NCBI RefSeq assembly: GCF_000143415.4
Contig: NW_003314633.1
Coordinates: 1-8,458 of the forward strand
Reading direction: 5' to 3'
DNA: 8,458 nucleotides
DNA from: Selaginella moellendorffii
Lineage: Eukaryota; Plantae; Lycopodiophyta
Shown: positions 1 through 8,401 of the stretch, one piece after another
Numbering within the stretch: the first letter of the stretch is position 1
Layout of the letters: each line of letters begins with the position of its first letter
Notes under the pieces: generated by a model
What the model saw: only the letters and a program-made list of their open reading frames with translations
Database searches by the model: none
What the model was told of the DNA's origin: nothing
Translations under genes and position numbers: made by a program

Positions 1-25
1 TCTGCAAGGGGGTGTGTGTGTGTGT

Positions 26-57
<32 letters not shown>

Positions 58-805: not shown

Positions 806-2595
806 TTAAGATGAGACATATATGCATTTTGTAACTCTGGTGCCAAACAGAGCTCCAGCACAGTTTTGAACAAGTGTGGCCAACGTGCTAGTTGCTCTTT
901 TGGGAGGATAGTAAGCTTCTGACCGGTACTGAGGCGCTATGGCAGGCCCAAACTGTAAGAACTGGTGGAATGTGGACCCATTAAGGAGCAGATCTCCTGT
1001 TGATTGGATTACTGGTGTCAAATCGAAATCAGCTCCTACGCCTTGAAACCATGGCGTGACTTCAGGTCTTCTGGCAGCGATGAAAACATTAGCCTCGCTC
1101 TTGACTTTAGCTCTGGCTCGAGCTCCTATTGCATAGTATCCCCAATTGGTGTACAAGTTGTTAATAACGTGGCAGTAGCCCCATCTAAAAACCATGCCCA
1201 CAAATTAATGTCAAGATTAGAAAAAATTGCTAAATGAAACCTGCAGTGAGGCATCCGTTGCATGGAATCCTTAAACCAGTTCCTGTAGACGGTGACCCTC
1301 ATTTTCTGATCTTGAATATCCGCATCGGAGGCTCCCAGAAGCATATTGAAGTTAGGATTAGTCAAAAAACAATTAGAGATGGTTACGTCGGTGGAACCTT
1401 GGACAACAGAAACCAGGCCCAGCTTTGCATTGAATGACGTGAGGTGATCCACCCAGACATTGCTGGTGCCAGCGAAAATGTGCACCGTATCCGTCTCACC
1501 AACTGTGTTGATTTGAAAATTGTGAAGAATGACGTTTTTGACTCCAGCAAGAACAATGGACCGACCATTGATAGTAATATTCACCCCTCTCCCGTCAATA
1601 GTTGTTGAGCTTCGTATCCATAGCATTTCAGTAAGGGTGATAATCATGGATTTTGCAAAGGTTATCCAGACTCCACCCTTGTCATCCCCTCCGAGACTCA
1701 CTCCATATCTTAAGGTTCCTTTGGAAGGGGTCACTGCATTGTCATCAGCATTGGTGACAATGTATGACTGACCTTGAGCCCCACCAGTGGTTCCTGAGGC
1801 GAATCCAACAACACAGGTAGGCAAAAGCTTACCTTTGCCACAGTTGCTGAATTGGCAGGTGGTACCGTCAACTGGTAAGCAAGATTTTCCAGGAGCAGCA
1901 GCACCACTACCTGAAAGATTACCCATGACCCATGAACAATTTTCCATGGATTTCACTCACCCGCCGTTTCAGGTTGGAAAACTACTTCGTCCGATTGTCG
2001 CCCAGTAAGGAACTGTAGCGGTTCTTCAGCCTCTTCAATATGAGTCAGTGCTTGCTTGGTTAAAAACAAAACTGCCTTCCCAGTATGATCCTATGGAGGA
2101 ATGAAATCTTTTAGACATAAAACACATGCTTCTATAATCCAATTGTGGAAATGAACACACTTGGGGTGCAGCTTCAAGAGCCGCATTGCAATCTTCAACG
2201 TTCTTTTTCGCATTTCCCAGATGTGTTCTCGAGCTCTCGTACTCATCTTCAAGAACATAAGTTTCAACTAGGGAGAGTGAAGAGATAGCGGCATTTATTT
2301 GCTTTTTGCACTTCCCAACGCTTGTAGGTGCCGATTCAGCACGCTGGAGATATAGTTCACCTTTCTCAATGCTGCCAATTACTTCTTGTTCTGACGTTTC
2401 ATTGATTGCTTGTTCATCCTTTTTCTGCTGTGAATGGCTGCCATCCAGCGGAGCTGATTCTTGTCCCAATGGCTGTGGAAAATCCAATTCAAGGGGCTCC
2501 TGAATCGAGCAGTGGAGTTGCTGAGAGATTATCAACACTAAAACAAAGCATAGAGCTTGCTTTCGCGTAGACATTTTTCCTATCGATTCTCTCAT
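806..2595 (-). CDS. Secreted pectate lyase family (PL1) protein with a long N-terminal extension including a PMEI-like helical segment; exons 2595-2161, 2090-1961, 1910-1241, 1184-806 (537 aa, or 530 aa from the ATG at 2574)
   Basis: Three GT-AG introns (70, 50, 56 bp) join the ORF pieces in frame (1614 nt). PL1 motifs: VGFASGTTGG, GTLRYGV, TTIDGRG, VWVDH, GSTDVTISN, MLLGASD, and QRMPHCR|WGYCHVINN (RxPxxR completed across intron 3), then WGYYAIG. Hydrophobic signal-like segment ALCFVLVLIIS follows MSTRKQ. Confidence 0.92.
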
Positions 2596-2744: not shown

Positions 2745-4267
2745 ATGGACAAAACGAGGCGCGATGAGCAGGATGCCTGGGAGCGCACTGAAGGAATTGA
2801 GCACAAACTCACCAAAATTGGTATTTTCTAGAGTCTCTGAAAAGGCAATAAAGAATTTCCCAATGTCTGCAGGAGTTGGTGGCAAGGCCTACTACGATGC
2901 TTCACAAATCAAAATTAAGAGGAACAAGGTACTTATAGCGGCTGCAAAGCTCGAGAACAAGCAGCTTCGTGCAACTCTTAATTCGTTGCTAGAACAAGAA
3001 AGATGTGCTTTGGGTCGCTCCGACTTGAGAAGACTCGGGGATCGTGTGGCAGCTCTTCGTAAGTGTTATGACGAGCAGAGACACAGGTCCATTGTTACGG
3101 AGGTTATGGTGAGCAATCTGCTGTGTGCACGATCGTGTTTTAAACTGTGACTGACAGCTGGAAAGTCAAACAACGAACACAAAATCTGCACAAGTGGACT
3201 GCGAACAGGCATTGGACAACAACACAGCTCCACTTGTCAAGCTACGAGCTCTGGAAGAAACACTTGAGCAAGCGGTACTAGGTCTTAAAGAAGCTCGTGA
3301 ACTAAAGAGCAGCTACGAAGCAACTTTAAAGCCCATATGCGATGAGAGAGCTATCTACAACAGCCAGGTCTGCCTGTCCAATCGCTAATTTAGTTAACTG
3401 TCAGTACGCTGTAGATGGACACCCTGGGTAGAACATCAAGGCGTAGAGAAGAGGAGTACGAGCAAATGACACTTATGTATTATGACGCCTTGCGCGCGAG
3501 AGAGGAATCAAGATCGGCACTGGAAGAAGTAGGTAAGGTTTTTATTTACATAAACGTGCCGTGATTCTTTTGCAGTGTGCATCTGGATTCCGTAGAATTT
3601 AAATTTATGTGGTGCATTTGCAGATGATGCGAGCGCAGTTTCCAATTGGGGTTAGATATCATAATTTGTTCAGTGAGGTATATTTGCTACCAGGTGCATT
3701 TATCCCGCTGACCCTTGCAGCATGGTACAGCCTGATCTTCCTAGGAACATCGCTACACTTGGTCAAATTCACGAGGTGTCCCCGCATATATTATCAGCTT
3801 TGAGCTTTCCAACAATGAAGGAATTATTTCACTATGTAGTCACCTTGCGGAGAAACAGCGATTACCTAGACCACCTTACAAGTGAGCTAAAAGAGCTTGT
3901 TAATCAACTGAAAAGTGGAACTCTGTCTGCTAAGGTGAGAAAATCATGTGCTTCTCATTAATCCTCAACTCTCCTATGTAGAGTTTACAAGAGAGAATTC
4001 AGAAAATGAAATGGAAAATCGCTGGGCAAATTGGACCCGAGCCTAGTGCAACTAGCCAGCGAAGAAAGAAAGGGGCTCTTGGTGATACCTTAAAGAAAAT
4101 GGTCGAAGGAACAAAGCGACTGATGAATAAAATTCACAAGTTTGGGACGCGACAGCGAGCTTCCTCTTTAATCTCCGTTATTCGAGGAACTAAAAGGCTC
4201 GTGGATAAGATTCACGAGGGGGAGATGTACAATGTATGTAAAGTCTTGGTTGTCACAGGTTGCTCAC

Positions 4268-4322
<55 letters not shown>

Positions 4323-4533
4323 ACTGAGGATGATAACGTGCGAAAGCTGTTGCTGCAATGTGAAGCAAAACTCATTTCGTGGCTTAAGGTAATGTGATTA
4401 CTCAAAATGACAGACCCTCAGATGAGATCACTTCTTGCTGCAGGGATTTCAAGAATGGCTTGTCGAAAAGAAAGTGCACAAAATGGGAGGCAGAAGTTTA
4501 GACAAGGGCGGATTGAACAGCATCAATGAATAG
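2745..4533 (+). CDS. CCDC151/ODAD3 (Chlamydomonas ODA10)-like axonemal coiled-coil protein; well-supported exons 2745-2820, 2873-3102, 3158-3367, 3415-~3530, 3821-3934, 3982-4233, 4323-4388, 4444-4533; splicing between ~3530 and 3820 unresolved
   Basis: Spliced translation reads IEHKLTKIGVGGKAYYDASQIKIKRNKVLIAAAKLENKQLR ... LRALEETLEQAVLGLKEARELKSSYEATLKPICDERAIYNSQMDTL ... EYEQMTLMYYDALRAREESRSAL ... GTKRLVDKIH ... DDNVRKLLLQCEAKL. These match, in order, recalled CCDC151 blocks (KAFFESSQWNIKKN; RNLENRLEKA..K..EA.....Y; EALNARD; LL..EEKL). GT-AG introns of 47-55 bp (one of 89 bp) keep the frame in the resolved parts. Confidence 0.75.
4270..4320 (+). repeat. C(TC)25 microsatellite forming the polypyrimidine tract of intron 4234-4322
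   Basis: Read directly. It abuts the AG acceptor at 4321-4322, after which the frame resumes TEDDNVRKLLLQCEAKL. Confidence 0.97.
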
Positions 4534-4637: not shown

Positions 4638-7600
4638 ATGGCGGGGAATGAGTGGATTAATGGCTATTTGGAAGCAATATTGGACACAGGAACTGCTGGA
4701 ACAATTGACGATCAGCAGCAGCGTCTATTAGAAAGTAGTCCTGCTCGAAGAATTGTTGCTGTGAATGCTACTAAATATTTCATCCAGGAGGTTGTCTCGG
4801 GCTTCGATGAGAGCGACATTCATCAGACGTGGATGAAGGTACCAAAACTGAAGAATAACGGAAAAGAAGTAACTCTTCTCTTTATTACAGGCAACTGCTT
4901 GTAGGAACTCAAAAGAGAGGAGTGCACGGCTTGAGAATTTATGTTGGAGGATATGGCATATAAGCCGCAAGAGAAAACAGGTTTGGTGCAAATGTTTTAA
5001 CGAAGCATCAGAAGTTCTTCTCAGATTGAGTGGGCAAATACACAAAGAGTTGCAGGCCGTCACTTTGAGCATGAGCAAGGGCGAAAAGATGCTGCGGATG
5101 ATTTGTGCGAGGATTATCCAGAGGCAGACCTACATTCAGATATAGCTGGACTTAGGCTCTCAAGAAATAGCTCCGAGACAGATGTGCGGAAAAGTTTCAA
5201 CGAAGGACAGCACAAAGACAAGTGTCTGTATATTGTCTTGATCAGGTACGCCATGTGGATCTGAATTTTACTTACGTTGGTTTAGCTTACATGGACTTGT
5301 TCGTGGGGAGAACATGGAACTTGGGCGTGACTCGGATACAGGAGGTCAGGTACTGACTTCCAAGTTGAGTTCGTTTCTTTAAAAGACGCCAGCTATAGGT
5401 CAAGTATGTTGTGGAGTTTGCAAGAGCTTTAGCTATGATGCCCGAAGTTTACCGCGTGGATTTGTTAACTCGTCAAATTTTGGCACCAGATGTTGACCGT
5501 AGCTACGGTGAGCCCACAGAAACGTTAGCCCCAGGTTCTTATGACTGCTGTGGAGACGAAGTAGGAGAGAGTAGTGGTGCCTACATTGTGCGCATTCCCT
5601 GTGGTCCGAGGGATCAATATCTACGGAAGGAATTATTATGGCCATATATTCAAGAATTTGTAGATGGGTCGCTAACGCACATTGTGAACATGGCTAAAGC
5701 TTTAGGAGAACAGATAACTGGTGGGGACTCGGTATGGCCTTATGTGATTCATGGACATTATGCCGACGCAGGGGATATTGCTGCTCTGATTTCAGGCGCA
5801 TTAAACGTACCAATGGTCTTAACAGGTCATTCTCTGGGCCGCAACAAACTTGAACAACTTTTGAAGCAAGGACGGCAGTCTAAGACAGATATCAACACAA
5901 GCTACAAAATTATGCGGAGAATAGAAGCTGAAGAGTTTTCCTTAGACACTGCGGAACTCGTCATAACTAGTACAAGACAAGAAATTGAAGAACAGTGGGG
6001 ATTATACGACGGTTTTGATCTGAAGCTTGAAAAAGTTTTGAGGGCTAGAATAAAAAGAGGCGTCAGCTGTCATGGCCGACACATGCCTCGCATGGCAGTA
6101 AGTTGATTTTCTTTAAGCTACTTTTCCAAGAATGAAGTGCAGGTTATTGCACCNNNNNNNNNNNNNNNNNNNNNNNNNNNNNNNNNNNNNNNNNNNNNNN
6201 NNNNNNNNNNNNNNNNNNNNNNNNNNNNNNNNNNNNNNNNNNNNNNNNNNNNNAAGAAGCAGTTGATATACTAGAAGGTGAAATAGAAGGAGAAGGCATC
6301 CCTGTGGCGCCTCCATCTCCTAAACCTGAACCACCTATTTGGAGTGAGGTTTGTAAAGAAAATGGCTTTTCTGGTTCTTCACTCAGCTCAAACCAGGTTA
6401 TGAAGTTTTTTACCAACCCCCATAAGCCAATGATTCTGGCCCTTGCTCGACCTGATCCAAAAAAGAACCTAGCAACGCTTGTAAAAGCCTTTGGAGAAAG
6501 CAAGCCGCTACGGGAATTGGCAAATATGGTAGTGGTAACTTTAGACGGACAATGTCTTTTTACATGGTCAATTATGTACAGACATTAATAATGGGGAACA
6601 GAGATGACATCGATACAATGCCAGGCACAAGCTCCAATATACTCACGAGTGTCCTTAAACTTATAGACAAGTACGATCTTTATGGTCAAGTTGCATACCC
6701 AAAACATCACAAGCAAAATGAAGTTCCAGACATTTATCGGCTAGCTGCCAAAACTAAGGTATTACTCCTTTTAAAAAGAAAAGAATTAGTGAACCTTATG
6801 AAAGCAGGGCGTATTTATCAACCCCGCACTGGTGGAGCCCTTTGGTTTGACCCTTATCGAGGTTTGTTGTTAGTATTGCCTGTTTTCTGGTTTCATAAAC
6901 CGTGTGCACAGGCAGCTGCACATGGTTTACCTATGGTTGCTACAATGAATGGAGGTCCAGTAGATATTCAAAAGGTGAGTCAGTATTTTTCATTAAATTT
7001 ATTAATGAGTTTTGTCTTCTATTAAAGACTCTGAGTAATGGAGTTCTTGTGGATCCACACGACGAGCAAGCCATCGCAACTGCATTGATCAAACTTGTTG
7101 CCGATCGTTGGTTGTGGGGAGAATGCCGTCGTAACGGCCTAAAAAATATTCACATGTATTCATGGCCTGAACATTGCAAAACATATCTATCAAAGATATC
7201 TCTTTGCAAAAGGAAACAGCCGCTATGGCAAAACAATTTTTCTAATCATAGTACTGAGGACAATTCCCAGGAAGATTCTTTAAAAGATGTGGAAGACATA
7301 TCTTTACAGCTATCTGACGATGGAGAAGTACCCGAGAACGTTGAGAAGGGCAAGCAAATATATGACAAACAACTAAGTTTAGTGGCTACGGAACAGAAAC
7401 TTATTGGGCTGGAGAAGTTGCAAAATTGTAAGTTCCCATTCTTAAGGAGAAGAAAAAAAGTATGTGTTCTAGCAATAGACAGCTACGACAGCAATAAAGC
7501 TTCCAAGAACATGCTGGCTGCAGTTCGTGAGATATTCACAGCTTGTAAGATGGGGTTAACGGGCTTTATTCTTTCTACAGCCATGACAGCTTCAGAGACC

Positions 7601-8401
7601 CTATCAGCGCTTGCAGAAGATGGAATACCCGTGACAGATTTTGATGCCTTGGTTTGTAACAGTGGTGCTTCGCTGTACTATCCTTCAATGAGCTTCAACA
7701 GTCAGGTGCACCTGGTGCCAGATTATGACTACGATCATCACATTGATTATCACTGGAGTAGCGACGGGATAAGGAAGGCAATGGGCAGGCTTACTGTCTC
7801 AGAGGCTGGAGACCTGCCAATAATCATTGAGGAGGAACTGCGTTCTAGCACGCACTGCGTTGCTTATCGGGTCAATACCGCAAATGTAAGTAGTTAACAT
7901 TGTCTTTAACTTGTCTTGCATTGTCTGTTAGCTATTTATCTCTGAATTAGATGGTGAAAGTGGATGAGTACCGTCGCCTCTTGAGAATGCGTGGCTTAAG
8001 GTGTCATATTATCTACTGCCTGAATACCACAAAGCTTCACATAGTTCCAGTGCTGGCCTCTCGTTCCCAGGCCATAAGGTATCTGAAACATGTATAGAGA
8101 GTATTTCATTTTCTTGCATAATGTCAGGTACTTGTTTGTGAGATGGGGAATGGATATAGGAAACACTGTTGTTTTTGTTGGTGAGACCGGTGATTCGGAT
8201 TACGAGCAGCTGCTATCCGGGATCCATAAGATTATTGTCTTAACAGGCCTTGTTCCTCACAGAGCTGCTGGCAAGGAAGATGTGGTTCGCACGACTGGGA
8301 CTAGAGAAGACGTTGTCCCATCTGAGAGTAATAATAATCTTGTCGCAACTAGTTGTGAAGCTATTGCTGCTGCACTCAGCAAGGTAAGCTTTCAAGTTTA
8401 G
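4638..8401 (+). CDS. SPS: Sucrose-phosphate synthase (GT4 glycosyltransferase plus SPP-like C-terminal domain), about 1030 aa; exons 4638-4838, 4891-4980, 5025-5245, 5286-5349, 5399-6097, 6143-6348 (contains the gap), 6397-6528, 6582-6758, 6808-6861, 6912-6974, 7028-7885, 7951-8078, 8128-8401
   Basis: Diagnostic plant SPS motifs: [152 protein letters not shown]. Twelve GT-AG introns of 40-65 bp are all phase-consistent. Confidence 0.98.
6154..6253. other. Assembly gap (100 N placeholder) within SPS exon 6
   Basis: Exactly 100 N, flanked by VIAP and EAVDILEGE coding sequence. Confidence 0.99.

What the first reader, a model, noticed from the sequence alone, without database searches (positions are those of the whole stretch)
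1408..1497. Lyase keeps the catalytic RxPxxR but lacks two canonical Ca2+-binding aspartates
Seen: GETDTVHIFAGTSNVWVDHLTSFNAKLGLVSVVQGSTDVTISN. Known: plant PL1 enzymes typically read DGDAI....S.IWVDH.SL..C.DGLIDA..GST.ITISN, and the Asp residues in DG and ID are Ca2+ ligands. Here they align to Leu (1422-1420) and Ser (1410-1408). The earlier Asp (ETD) and RMPHCR are retained, and a Lys sits next to the first lost Asp. Known: fungal pectin lyases are Ca-independent and place a basic residue in this region. Inference: either a Ca-independent, pectin-lyase-like enzyme acting on methylated pectin, which would fit with an attached PME inhibitor, or a non-catalytic pectin binder.
Basis: partly seen in the sequence, partly recalled or inferred. 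Interest (0 to 1): 0.7.

Follow-up and report, generated by a model that had tools for sequence, protein, structure and literature searches.

The report
Calcium-site-less plant pectate lyase family
This spikemoss gene belongs to an ancient, conserved and apparently undescribed branch of plant pectate-lyase-like proteins that kept the catalytic arginine but lost the calcium site, and that carries an inhibitor-like four-helix domain in front; its biochemistry is untested.

Summary
Window 1408-1497 (minus strand) encodes ETDTVHIFAGTSNVWVDHLTSFNAKLGLVS. In alignments to Jun a 1 and other solved PL1 lyases, Leu (1422-1420) and Ser (1410-1408) take the places of two Ca2+-ligand aspartates. The first Asp and RMPHCR are kept.

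The gene is intact: four exons, all introns GT..AG. It is the second haplotype of the Selaginella moellendorffii locus of XP "putative pectate lyase 21".

The substitutions are not private decay. Among the 276 proteins collected here, 85 from Zygnematophyceae to early-diverging angiosperms share them, and none came from core eudicots or grasses. They form a clade (support 100/98) sister to the canonical plant pectate-lyase-like proteins (PLLs). In this clade the catalytic Arg is invariant. Two His and one Arg are clade-specific near-invariants. KLGLVS is exact in mosses, lycophytes, a fern, Ginkgo and conifers.

The N-terminal domain folds as a four-helix bundle whose best structural matches are PME inhibitors. 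Sequence support for that is weak.

Best reading: a Ca-independent lyase, or less likely a non-catalytic binder, with a PMEI-like pro-domain. It is not a member of the fungal pectin lyases. Activity and expression were not shown. The scan noted the same family before on another piece of this genome (s1-419634).

The parts
806..2574 (-). Whole coding region of the gene, about 530 codons in 4 exons. An in-frame ATG 7 codons upstream lies at 2595.
   Evidence: ORFs and translations. GT..AG at all three introns. 98.4% identical to S. moellendorffii GL377577.1, the locus of P0058.
2161..2574 (-). Exon 1: signal-peptide-like start (MSTRKQALCFVLVLIISQQLHC), an acidic linker, and helices 1-3 of the PMEI-like domain. 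The two family-invariant Cys are at 2310-2308 and 2190-2188.
   Evidence: 134/138 identical to P0058. A2 has both Cys invariant in 19 members, 40 residues apart in most of them. Weak PF04043 hit, E 0.01-0.025.
1961..2090 (-). Exon 2: helix 4 of the N-domain plus the linker. An in-frame alternative acceptor 36 nt downstream (exon start 2054) is the one used in the NCBI model P0058.
   Evidence: Paralogs and orthologs P0004, P0060 and P0061 carry the longer helix-4 segment.
1241..1910 (-). Exon 3: first two thirds of the PL1 beta-helix domain, including the active-site rungs.
   Evidence: PF00544 E 1.3e-14. 222/222 residues identical to P0058. 2 synonymous and 0 non-synonymous differences between haplotypes.
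1408..1497 (-). The finding itself: ETD..WVDH..AKLGLVS. Asp 1491-1489 is kept, the family-specific His is at 1482-1480, Lys at 1425-1423, Leu 1422-1420 (lost ligand 1) and Ser 1410-1408 (lost ligand 2).
1348..1350 (-). Phe at the PelC K190 / Jun a 1 K197 column (NFNMLLG).
   Evidence: F/Y in 67 of 68 land-plant members; K, D or E in canonical PLLs.
1241..1257 (-). R-M-P-H-C-R motif. The catalytic-base Arg is at 1257-1255 and the family-specific His (Arg in all canonical PLLs) at 1248-1246. The last Arg codon is completed by base 1184 across intron 3.
806..1184 (-). Exon 4: the rest of the beta-helix and the C-terminal cap, with the stop at 808-806. The family-invariant Arg (Ser in all canonical PLLs) is at 1120-1118.
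   Evidence: Identical in the other haplotype. The C-terminus CAGALFG..C.. matches family members, unlike the NCBI model's tail.

Best explanation
Shown: the gene encodes a secreted-type, two-domain protein of a distinct and ancient streptophyte branch of polysaccharide lyase family 1. The catalytic-domain fold is that of plant pectate lyases. The canonical Ca2+ site is dismantled, because two of the three ligand carboxylates are now Leu and Ser, while the Arg that acts as Bronsted base in PL1 enzymes is strictly conserved. The family also has its own near-invariant groove-region residues: His in DTVH, His in RMPHCR and Arg in AIGxR.

Inferred: the protein is still a beta-eliminating lyase, with Arg388 (P0058 numbering, codon 1257-1255) as base. 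It works without Ca2+, as VexL and fungal pectin lyases do. The role of Ca2+ would be taken by protein side chains, or made unnecessary by an esterified (methyl- or acetyl-) galacturonan substrate.

Inferred by analogy with type-I pectin methylesterases: the N-terminal PMEI-like four-helix domain is a pro-domain (an intramolecular inhibitor or chaperone) rather than a free PME inhibitor.
For: The gene is intact with canonical splice sites, and both haplotypes are intact. The PL-domain exons differ by 2 synonymous and 0 non-synonymous changes, against 4 and 5 in the N-domain exons.

A conserved family of 85 sequences runs from Closterium, Spirogloea and Mesotaenium through liverworts, mosses, lycophytes, ferns and gymnosperms to Amborella, Nymphaeales, magnoliids, Acorus, Ranunculales, Proteales and Trochodendrales. 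It is monophyletic at 100/98 and sister to the canonical PLLs at 99/96 (quick tree).

Key columns: base Arg 86/86; Asp310 80/84; first lost ligand Leu 55/68 in land plants and Arg 17/17 in algae; second lost ligand Ser or Thr 67/68; His313 78/84; His391 83/86 (Arg in 53/53 canonical); Arg415 77/77 (Ser in 51/51 canonical).

The AF2 model has pLDDT 92.6. Its best structural matches are Jun a 1 (TM 0.83) and VexL (0.73). VexL is a PL1 lyase shown to be EDTA-insensitive, with Arg232 as base and an acidic optimum. Pectin lyase B is tabulated with Arg176 as neutraliser and Arg236 as base.

The N-domain AF2 model is four helices at pLDDT 93.5. The top Foldseek and VIA matches of 350,542 chains are PMEIs: TM 0.69-0.77, Z 15.1-16.3, 112-115 of 121 residues aligned.
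Against: There are no activity data for any family member. Expression was not shown here: 0 reads in three RNA runs, which is not a valid test.

Half of the land-plant members have no basic residue at or next to the lost ligand, so no single substitute neutraliser is established. I could not read model coordinates, so the spatial placement of His313, His391 and Arg415 is inferred from strand periodicity only.

The PL domain is as basic as canonical PLLs (median pI 8.4 against 7.8), so overall charge gives no sign of a switch to a neutral substrate.

Conserved catalytic-looking residues can persist in binding-only proteins. The PMEI likeness fails Pfam's cut-off and a PDB profile search. Helical bundles also give a high background Z of about 13-14.
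Confidence: 0.55

Rival explanations
1. Non-catalytic derivative: a pectin-binding or wall-signalling protein, or a scaffold, that keeps the PL1 groove for binding but no longer cleaves.
For: Two of three Ca ligands and the K190-column Lys are lost, and twelve basic positions conserved in canonical PLLs are not conserved here. Within the algal branch there are clear derivatives that have even lost the base Arg: the Closterium proteins P0148-P0150, P0092, P0142 and P0147 have Met at that column. This shows that the scaffold tolerates non-catalytic use.
Against: Across the 85 family sequences the base Arg, the Pro and the second Arg of RxPxxR, WVDH and Asp310 are invariant or nearly so over more than 500 million years. 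This is the pattern expected of an active site, and new invariant His and Arg residues appear around it.
Confidence: 0.25
2. Still a Ca2+-dependent pectate lyase that binds Ca2+ through other ligands: Asp310 plus the family-specific acidic residues Asp344, Asp367, Glu423 or Asp447, or Ca2+ carried by the substrate.
For: Asp310 is retained. Four acidic positions are conserved only in the family. This gene also has Glu at the PelC D129 column.
Against: That Glu/Asp column is acidic in only 49% of the family. The family-only acidic positions lie 7-110 residues away from the lost ligands in sequence, on other turns or strands of the model, and could not be placed in the site. In all 53 canonical PLLs both lost positions are Asp.
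Confidence: 0.12
3. A decaying or private variant copy: a pseudogene or a relaxed paralog.
For: No RNA reads were recovered. The NCBI model differs from mine at two splice choices.
Against: The reading frame is intact in both haplotypes, with 0 non-synonymous changes in 1044 nt of the PL domain. The KLGLVS string is identical in Sphagnum, Physcomitrium, Diphasiastrum, Ceratopteris, Ginkgo, Taxus and Cryptomeria. The family is monophyletic and old.
Confidence: 0.02
4. A fungal or bacterial pectin lyase acquired by horizontal transfer.
For: The D-to-R/L spacing is short as in pectin lyase B, and algal members carry Arg at the column of the first lost ligand.
Against: The tree places the family as sister to the canonical plant PLLs (99/96), with bacterial and short-loop sequences outside. 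Pectin lyases A and B are only ranks 21-28 by structure, TM 0.58-0.62, and score 28-58 bits by profile against 243 for Jun a 1.
Confidence: 0.03

Closest known systems
Canonical plant pectate lyase-like proteins (PLLs; Jun a 1 / 1PXZ, Arabidopsis PLL1-26)
   Same: PL1 right-handed beta-helix (TM 0.83, 31% identity). Shared motifs include WVDH, GST..TISN, MLLG, RxPxxR and the first Asp. The family is their sister group in the tree.
   Different: Two Ca-ligand Asp are replaced by Leu and Ser/Thr. The loop before the first Asp is 20 residues shorter. RMPRCR becomes RMPHCR and AIGGS becomes AIGxR. A PMEI-like N-domain is present. The family is absent from core eudicots and grasses in my searches.
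VexL (6FI2), the Vi-antigen lyase of Achromobacter
   Same: Second-best sequence and structure match (190 bits by profile, TM 0.73). It has a short loop, lacks the DxD Ca motifs, is experimentally metal-independent with an Arg base and an acidic optimum, and is a secreted, disulfide-containing protein.
   Different: It is bacterial and falls as an outgroup in the tree. It keeps Asp at the first lost-ligand column and the Lys, has Gln instead of Asp310, and lacks the family His, His and Arg.
Aspergillus niger pectin lyases A and B (1IDJ/1IDK, 1QCX)
   Same: PL1 enzymes that need no Ca2+. They keep one Asp (Asp154) and the base Arg (Arg236), and a basic residue (Arg176) stands in for Ca2+. Algal members of this family have Arg at the first lost-ligand column.
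   Different: They are distant in fold score and sequence. This gene and most land-plant members have Leu, not Arg, at that column. I could not obtain a residue-level alignment to 1QCX, so the column equivalence with Arg176 rests on published PelC/PNL alignments and my memory of them.
PRO region of type-I (group 2) plant pectin methylesterases; free PMEIs (1X8Z, 1XG2_B)
   Same: An N-terminal PMEI-fold four-helix bundle fused in front of a secreted right-handed beta-helix pectin enzyme. The best structural matches are PMEIs. Two conserved Cys lie about 40 residues apart on helices 2 and 3, which matches my recollection of the second PMEI disulfide (not checked here).
   Different: The partner domain is PL1, not CE8. 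The N-terminal hairpin with the first PMEI disulfide is absent. No conserved basic processing motif was seen in the linker. Pfam PF04043 scores are below threshold.
Short-loop plant PLLs without a signal peptide (probably 'Clade 5' of preprint 10.1101/2024.12.04.626843; here P0178 Paulownia and P0191 Zizania)
   Same: They also lack the ~18-20-residue loop of the other plant PLLs.
   Different: They keep D, D, K, R, R, R and S at all key columns, and they fall outside the family-plus-canonical clade.

Membership tests
Polysaccharide lyase family 1 (Pfam PF00544 Pectate_lyase_4) | Significant match to the family profile | tested here: met
   Exon 3 scores 54.7 bits (cut-off 24), E 1.3e-14. Exon 4 continues the profile to its end (176-211 of 211) at 21.6 bits.
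Polysaccharide lyase family 1 (Pfam PF00544 Pectate_lyase_4) | Right-handed parallel beta-helix fold | tested here: met
   AF2 model of P0058:172-505 (identical to the window in exon 3 and in 112/125 residues of exon 4) has pLDDT 92.6. Its 28 best Foldseek matches are PL1 structures.
Ca2+-dependent pectate lyase (EC 4.2.2.2, PelC/BsPel/Jun a 1 type) | Three acidic Ca2+ ligands (PelC D131, E166, D170) | tested here: not met
   Only the first is present (Asp 1491-1489). The others are Leu and Ser.
Ca2+-dependent pectate lyase (EC 4.2.2.2, PelC/BsPel/Jun a 1 type) | Arg base and second Arg in RxPxxR | tested here: met
   RMPHCR is present and invariant in the family.
Ca2+-dependent pectate lyase (EC 4.2.2.2, PelC/BsPel/Jun a 1 type) | Ca2+-dependent cleavage of polygalacturonate | not testable with these tools
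   Needs an enzyme assay.
Pectin lyase (EC 4.2.2.10, Aspergillus PLA/PLB type) | Asp154 and base Arg236 equivalents | tested here: met
   Asp310 and Arg388 are present.
Pectin lyase (EC 4.2.2.10, Aspergillus PLA/PLB type) | Arg (Arg176) replacing the Ca2+ ligand as charge neutraliser | tested here: not met
   This gene has Leu with a Lys one residue before it. Arg occupies the column in 17/17 algal and 7/68 land-plant relatives. Equivalence with Arg176 was not aligned residue by residue here.
Pectin lyase (EC 4.2.2.10, Aspergillus PLA/PLB type) | Closest relatives are pectin lyases | tested here: not met
   1QCX, 1IDK and 1IDJ rank 21-28 with TM 0.58-0.62 and score 28-58 bits. The tree puts the family with plant PLLs.
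Pectin lyase (EC 4.2.2.10, Aspergillus PLA/PLB type) | Ca-independent cleavage of methyl-esterified pectin | not testable with these tools
   Needs an enzyme assay.
PMEI / invertase inhibitor (Pfam PF04043) | Profile match above the gathering score | tested here: not met
   15.2-16.4 bits against a cut-off of 29. Only 3 of 19 family N-domains match at E<1. A profile search of the PDB found no PMEI.
PMEI / invertase inhibitor (Pfam PF04043) | Up-down four-helix bundle superposable on PMEI | tested here: met
   AF2 of the paralog N-domain P0060:95-215 with a 32-sequence alignment gave pLDDT 93.5. Top matches are 1X8Z, 1X90, 1X91 and 1XG2_B (TM 0.69-0.77, Z 15.1-16.3), about 2 Z above unrelated bundles. 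The window's own N-domain is split by an intron and was not folded.
PMEI / invertase inhibitor (Pfam PF04043) | Two disulfides, including the N-terminal hairpin disulfide | tested here: not met
   Only one conserved Cys pair is present, on helices 2 and 3, 40 residues apart in most members. There is no N-terminal hairpin.
PMEI / invertase inhibitor (Pfam PF04043) | Inhibits PME or invertase | not testable with these tools
   Needs an assay.
VexL-type PL1 subfamily | Groups with VexL in phylogeny | tested here: not met
   The VexL-like sequences P0053 and P0054 fall outside the plant clade.

The most novel reading that the evidence does not exclude
Streptophytes have their own Ca2+-independent pectin lyase lineage that acts on esterified homogalacturonan in the acidic wall. 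It is made as a pro-enzyme with a PMEI-fold autoinhibitory domain. It arose before the split between Zygnematophyceae and land plants and was lost in core eudicots and most monocots, which would explain why model-plant work never found it. It would be the first plant pectin lyase, and the second case after type-I PMEs of a PMEI-like pro-domain on a beta-helix pectin enzyme.
Probability: 0.3. Interest if true: 0.8.

Novelty: new variant of a known kind. Interest (0 to 1): 0.62.

Why it matters
Plant pectate-lyase-like genes are treated as one Ca-dependent family. A recent land-plant-wide survey states that the Ca, substrate and catalytic residues are conserved in all clades. This lineage contradicts that. 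It spans algae to early angiosperms, is missing from Arabidopsis-type and grass genomes, and has a rebuilt active site plus an inhibitor-like pro-domain. If it is active, it adds a Ca-independent route of pectin cleavage to early land-plant wall biology. It also provides a natural series (Arg-Asp in algae, Lys-Leu..Ser in mosses to gymnosperms, x-Leu..Thr in angiosperms) for studying how PL1 enzymes replace Ca2+. Members in Marchantia and Physcomitrium make it directly testable.

Tried and rejected
- **RNA evidence.** Three raw RNA-seq runs of the species gave 0 reads on 650-2750 at about 12% sampling. The one contig laid (X1) spans intron 3, so it is genomic. Expression and the choice between the two exon-2 acceptors therefore remain open.
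- **N-domain sequence homology.** A PDB profile search returned only chance coiled-coil hits and no PMEI. Pfam on 19 N-domains gave 3 weak PMEI hits.
- **Charge as a clue to substrate.** The pI of the PL domains does not differ from canonical PLLs, so I dropped that argument, even though 12 basic positions are conserved only in canonical PLLs.
- **The adjacent Lys as a general Ca2+ substitute.** Rejected as universal: it is present in 25 of 68 land-plant members, and none of the angiosperm or liverwort members examined has it.
- **Identity with the literature's short-loop 'Clade 5'.** Rejected. Representatives from Paulownia and Zizania keep all canonical residues and fall elsewhere in the tree.
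- **Residue-level alignment to pectin lyase B or PelC.** Not obtainable. The PDB tool prints only the five best alignments, and I did not type sequences from memory.
- **Spliced model.** The exons were searched one by one by reference and never joined. The database protein P0058 (same locus, other haplotype) stood in for the full-length product.
- **Literature.** Searches for a description of this family or of a PMEI-PL1 fusion found none.
Full report
**Observation.** Window 1408-1497 read on the minus strand gives ETDTVHIFAGTSNVWVDHLTSFNAKLGLVS. HMMER alignments to solved PL1 structures pair NAKLGLVSV with DCSDGLIDV of Jun a 1 and NGNDGAVDI of Thermotoga PelA. Leu (1422-1420) and Ser (1410-1408) therefore occupy the two Asp columns. 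Asp of ETD and RMPHCR are retained. The invariant WVDH and GSTDVTISN blocks on either side fix the register. The Jun a 1 K197 / PelC K190 column is Phe here (1350-1348).

**Gene and source.** The gene has four exons on the minus strand: 2574..2161, 2090..1961, 1910..1241 and 1184..806. All three introns are GT..AG. The region is 98.4% identical to Selaginella moellendorffii scaffold GL377577.1. That scaffold carries P0058, the NCBI "putative pectate lyase 21" of 531 aa. Exon 3 is 222/222 identical to P0058 and exon 1 is 134/138 identical. The window is therefore the second haplotype of that locus.
- Between haplotypes, the PL-domain exons differ by 2 synonymous and 0 non-synonymous changes. 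The N-domain exons differ by 4 and 5.
- The NCBI model uses an in-frame acceptor 36 nt further into exon 2 and a different 3' end.
- Homologs support the longer exon 2 and the CAGALFG..C.. terminus that the window encodes directly.
- RNA reads could not settle this: 0 reads in three runs, and the only contig laid was genomic.

**The substitutions are a family trait.**
- Word-based searches and an exhaustive profile search of 1.84 billion representatives recovered 85 sequences with the same signature.
- They come from Closterium, Spirogloea, Mesotaenium, liverworts, mosses, lycophytes (four paralogs in Selaginella), ferns, Ginkgo, conifers, Amborella, Nymphaeales, magnoliids, Acorus, Ranunculales, Proteales and Tetracentron. 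None is from core eudicots or grasses.
- In a careful ML tree the family is one clade (100/98). It is sister to the canonical long-loop PLLs (100/96), and the two together have 99/96 support.
- Bacterial PL1, VexL-like sequences and the short-loop plant PLLs of Paulownia and Zizania lie outside (quick tree). Algal members are sister to land-plant members.

Residues at the key columns:

| Column (P0058 numbering) | This family | Canonical plant PLLs |
|---|---|---|
| Base Arg388 | 86/86 | 53/53 Arg |
| Asp310 | 80/84 | 53/53 Asp |
| First lost ligand (333) | Leu 55/68 in land plants, Arg 17/17 in algae | Asp 53/53 |
| Second lost ligand (337) | Ser or Thr 67/68 in land plants, Asp 13/17 in algae | Asp 53/53 |
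| 357 (PelC K190 column) | Phe or Tyr 67/68 in land plants | K, D or E |
| His313 | 78/84 | variable |
| 391 | His 83/86 | Arg 53/53 |
| 415 | Arg 77/77 | Ser 51/51 |

- The loop before Asp310 is 20 residues shorter than in canonical PLLs.
- KLGLVS is letter-for-letter conserved in Sphagnum, Physcomitrium, Diphasiastrum, Ceratopteris, Ginkgo, Taxus and Cryptomeria.
- The Lys is not universal. It occurs in 25 of 68 land-plant members, and half of them have no basic residue at either position.

**Structure.** An AF2 model of the PL domain (P0058:172-505 with 50 family sequences) has pLDDT 92.6. Its nearest solved structures are Jun a 1 (TM 0.83), VexL (0.73) and bacterial or fungal pectate lyases. 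Pectin lyases A and B rank 21-28 with TM 0.58-0.62. A family profile scores 243 bits on Jun a 1, 190 on VexL, 58 on pectin lyase B and 28-29 on pectin lyase A. The tools return no coordinates. The position of the family-specific His, His and Arg relative to the base Arg is therefore inferred from strand periodicity in the DSSP string. Arg415 lies one helix turn, 22 residues, after Arg393.

**N-terminal domain.**
- Between the signal-peptide-like start and the lyase lies a ~120-residue helical region. It has two invariant Cys, 40 residues apart in most members.
- Pfam PMEI hits are sub-threshold, and a PDB profile search finds no PMEI.
- An AF2 model of the Selaginella paralog's domain is a confident four-helix bundle (pLDDT 93.5).
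- Its best matches among 350,542 chains are Arabidopsis and kiwi PMEIs: Foldseek TM 0.69-0.77 and VIA Z 15.1-16.3 over 112-115 of 121 residues. Designed bundles (Z 13.9-14.3) and the invertase inhibitors (Z 13.2-13.7) follow.
- The margin over unrelated bundles is only about 2 Z. I call the domain PMEI-like in fold, with membership unproven.
- The domain is present from Spirogloea to angiosperms, so the fusion is as old as the family.

**Mechanism.** Shown: the Ca2+ site of PL1 pectate lyases cannot form as in PelC, BsPel or Jun a 1, while the base Arg and its motif are under strict constraint. There is precedent. VexL is a PL1 lyase unaffected by EDTA, with Arg232 as base and a pH optimum of 5.5. 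Pectin lyases need no Ca2+, and pectin lyase B is tabulated with Arg176 as neutraliser and Arg236 as base.

Inferred: the protein is a Ca-independent beta-eliminase. Either it neutralises the substrate carboxylate with protein side chains, or it prefers esterified galacturonan. The candidate side chains are Arg in algae, and Lys332, His313, His391 or Arg415 in land plants. By analogy with type-I PMEs, the PMEI-like domain is most simply a pro-domain.

Arguments against the main reading are these. Overall charge is unchanged. No universal neutraliser is identified. Non-catalytic relatives exist in algae. Family-only acidic residues leave a small chance of an alternative metal site.

**Known or new.** Literature searches found PLL phylogenies that describe five clades and state that the Ca, substrate and catalytic residues are conserved in all of them. 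None describes this signature or a PMEI-PL1 fusion. The short-loop "Clade 5" described there fits P0178 and P0191, which keep every canonical residue and are not this family. I cannot exclude that family members were included unnoticed in that clade.

I reproduced its main points independently, except expression.

**Verdict.** This is a new variant of a known kind, of moderate to high interest, with biochemistry as the open question.

Noticed in passing
window 4640-8400 (+), N gap 6154-6253: Multi-exon sucrose-phosphate synthase gene with very short introns, interrupted by a 100-N assembly gap. It has a Pfam GT-B sucrose-synthase hit, and the allelic locus is annotated with PF00862, PF00534 and PF05116.
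   Followed up: partly
window 2764-4530 (+): A string of in-phase ORFs that look like exons of a coiled-coil protein (starting MSRMPGSALKEL...). There is no Pfam match, and no gene is called at the matching place of the allelic NCBI locus L001. It may be an unannotated gene.
   Followed up: partly
window 10-56 and 4272-4320: (GT)n(GA)n and (CT)n microsatellites. The second lies in a probable intron of the coiled-coil gene.
   Followed up: no
window 2054 vs 2090 and 806-850 (-); P0058: The NCBI model of the allelic locus uses an in-frame acceptor 36 nt downstream in exon 2 and splices away the family-typical C-terminus. Homologs favour the longer exon 2 and the direct read-through to the stop at 808-806.
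   Followed up: partly
P0148, P0149, P0150, P0092, P0142, P0147 (Closterium): Long algal proteins, some with two PL1-like stretches (P0148-P0150, P0092) and some with Pro/Lys-rich repeats (P0142, P0147). The base Arg column is Met and the RxPxxR His column is Leu. They are likely non-catalytic offshoots of the same family.
   Followed up: partly
P0027, P0029, P0031, P0055 (Cryptomeria, neighbouring SUGI_00057xx-00058xx genes): A conifer gene cluster of family members. Three of them (P0027, P0029, P0031) have also lost Asp310 (Asn); P0055 has a gap at that column. All four carry Arg at the first lost-ligand column. They sit on a long branch in the tree.
   Followed up: no
L001 6211-7841 (+), matching the window below about 600 (-): A tubulin-tyrosine-ligase-like (PF03133) gene lies downstream of the lyase gene in the allelic locus. 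Its start probably reaches into the first ~600 bases of the window.
   Followed up: no
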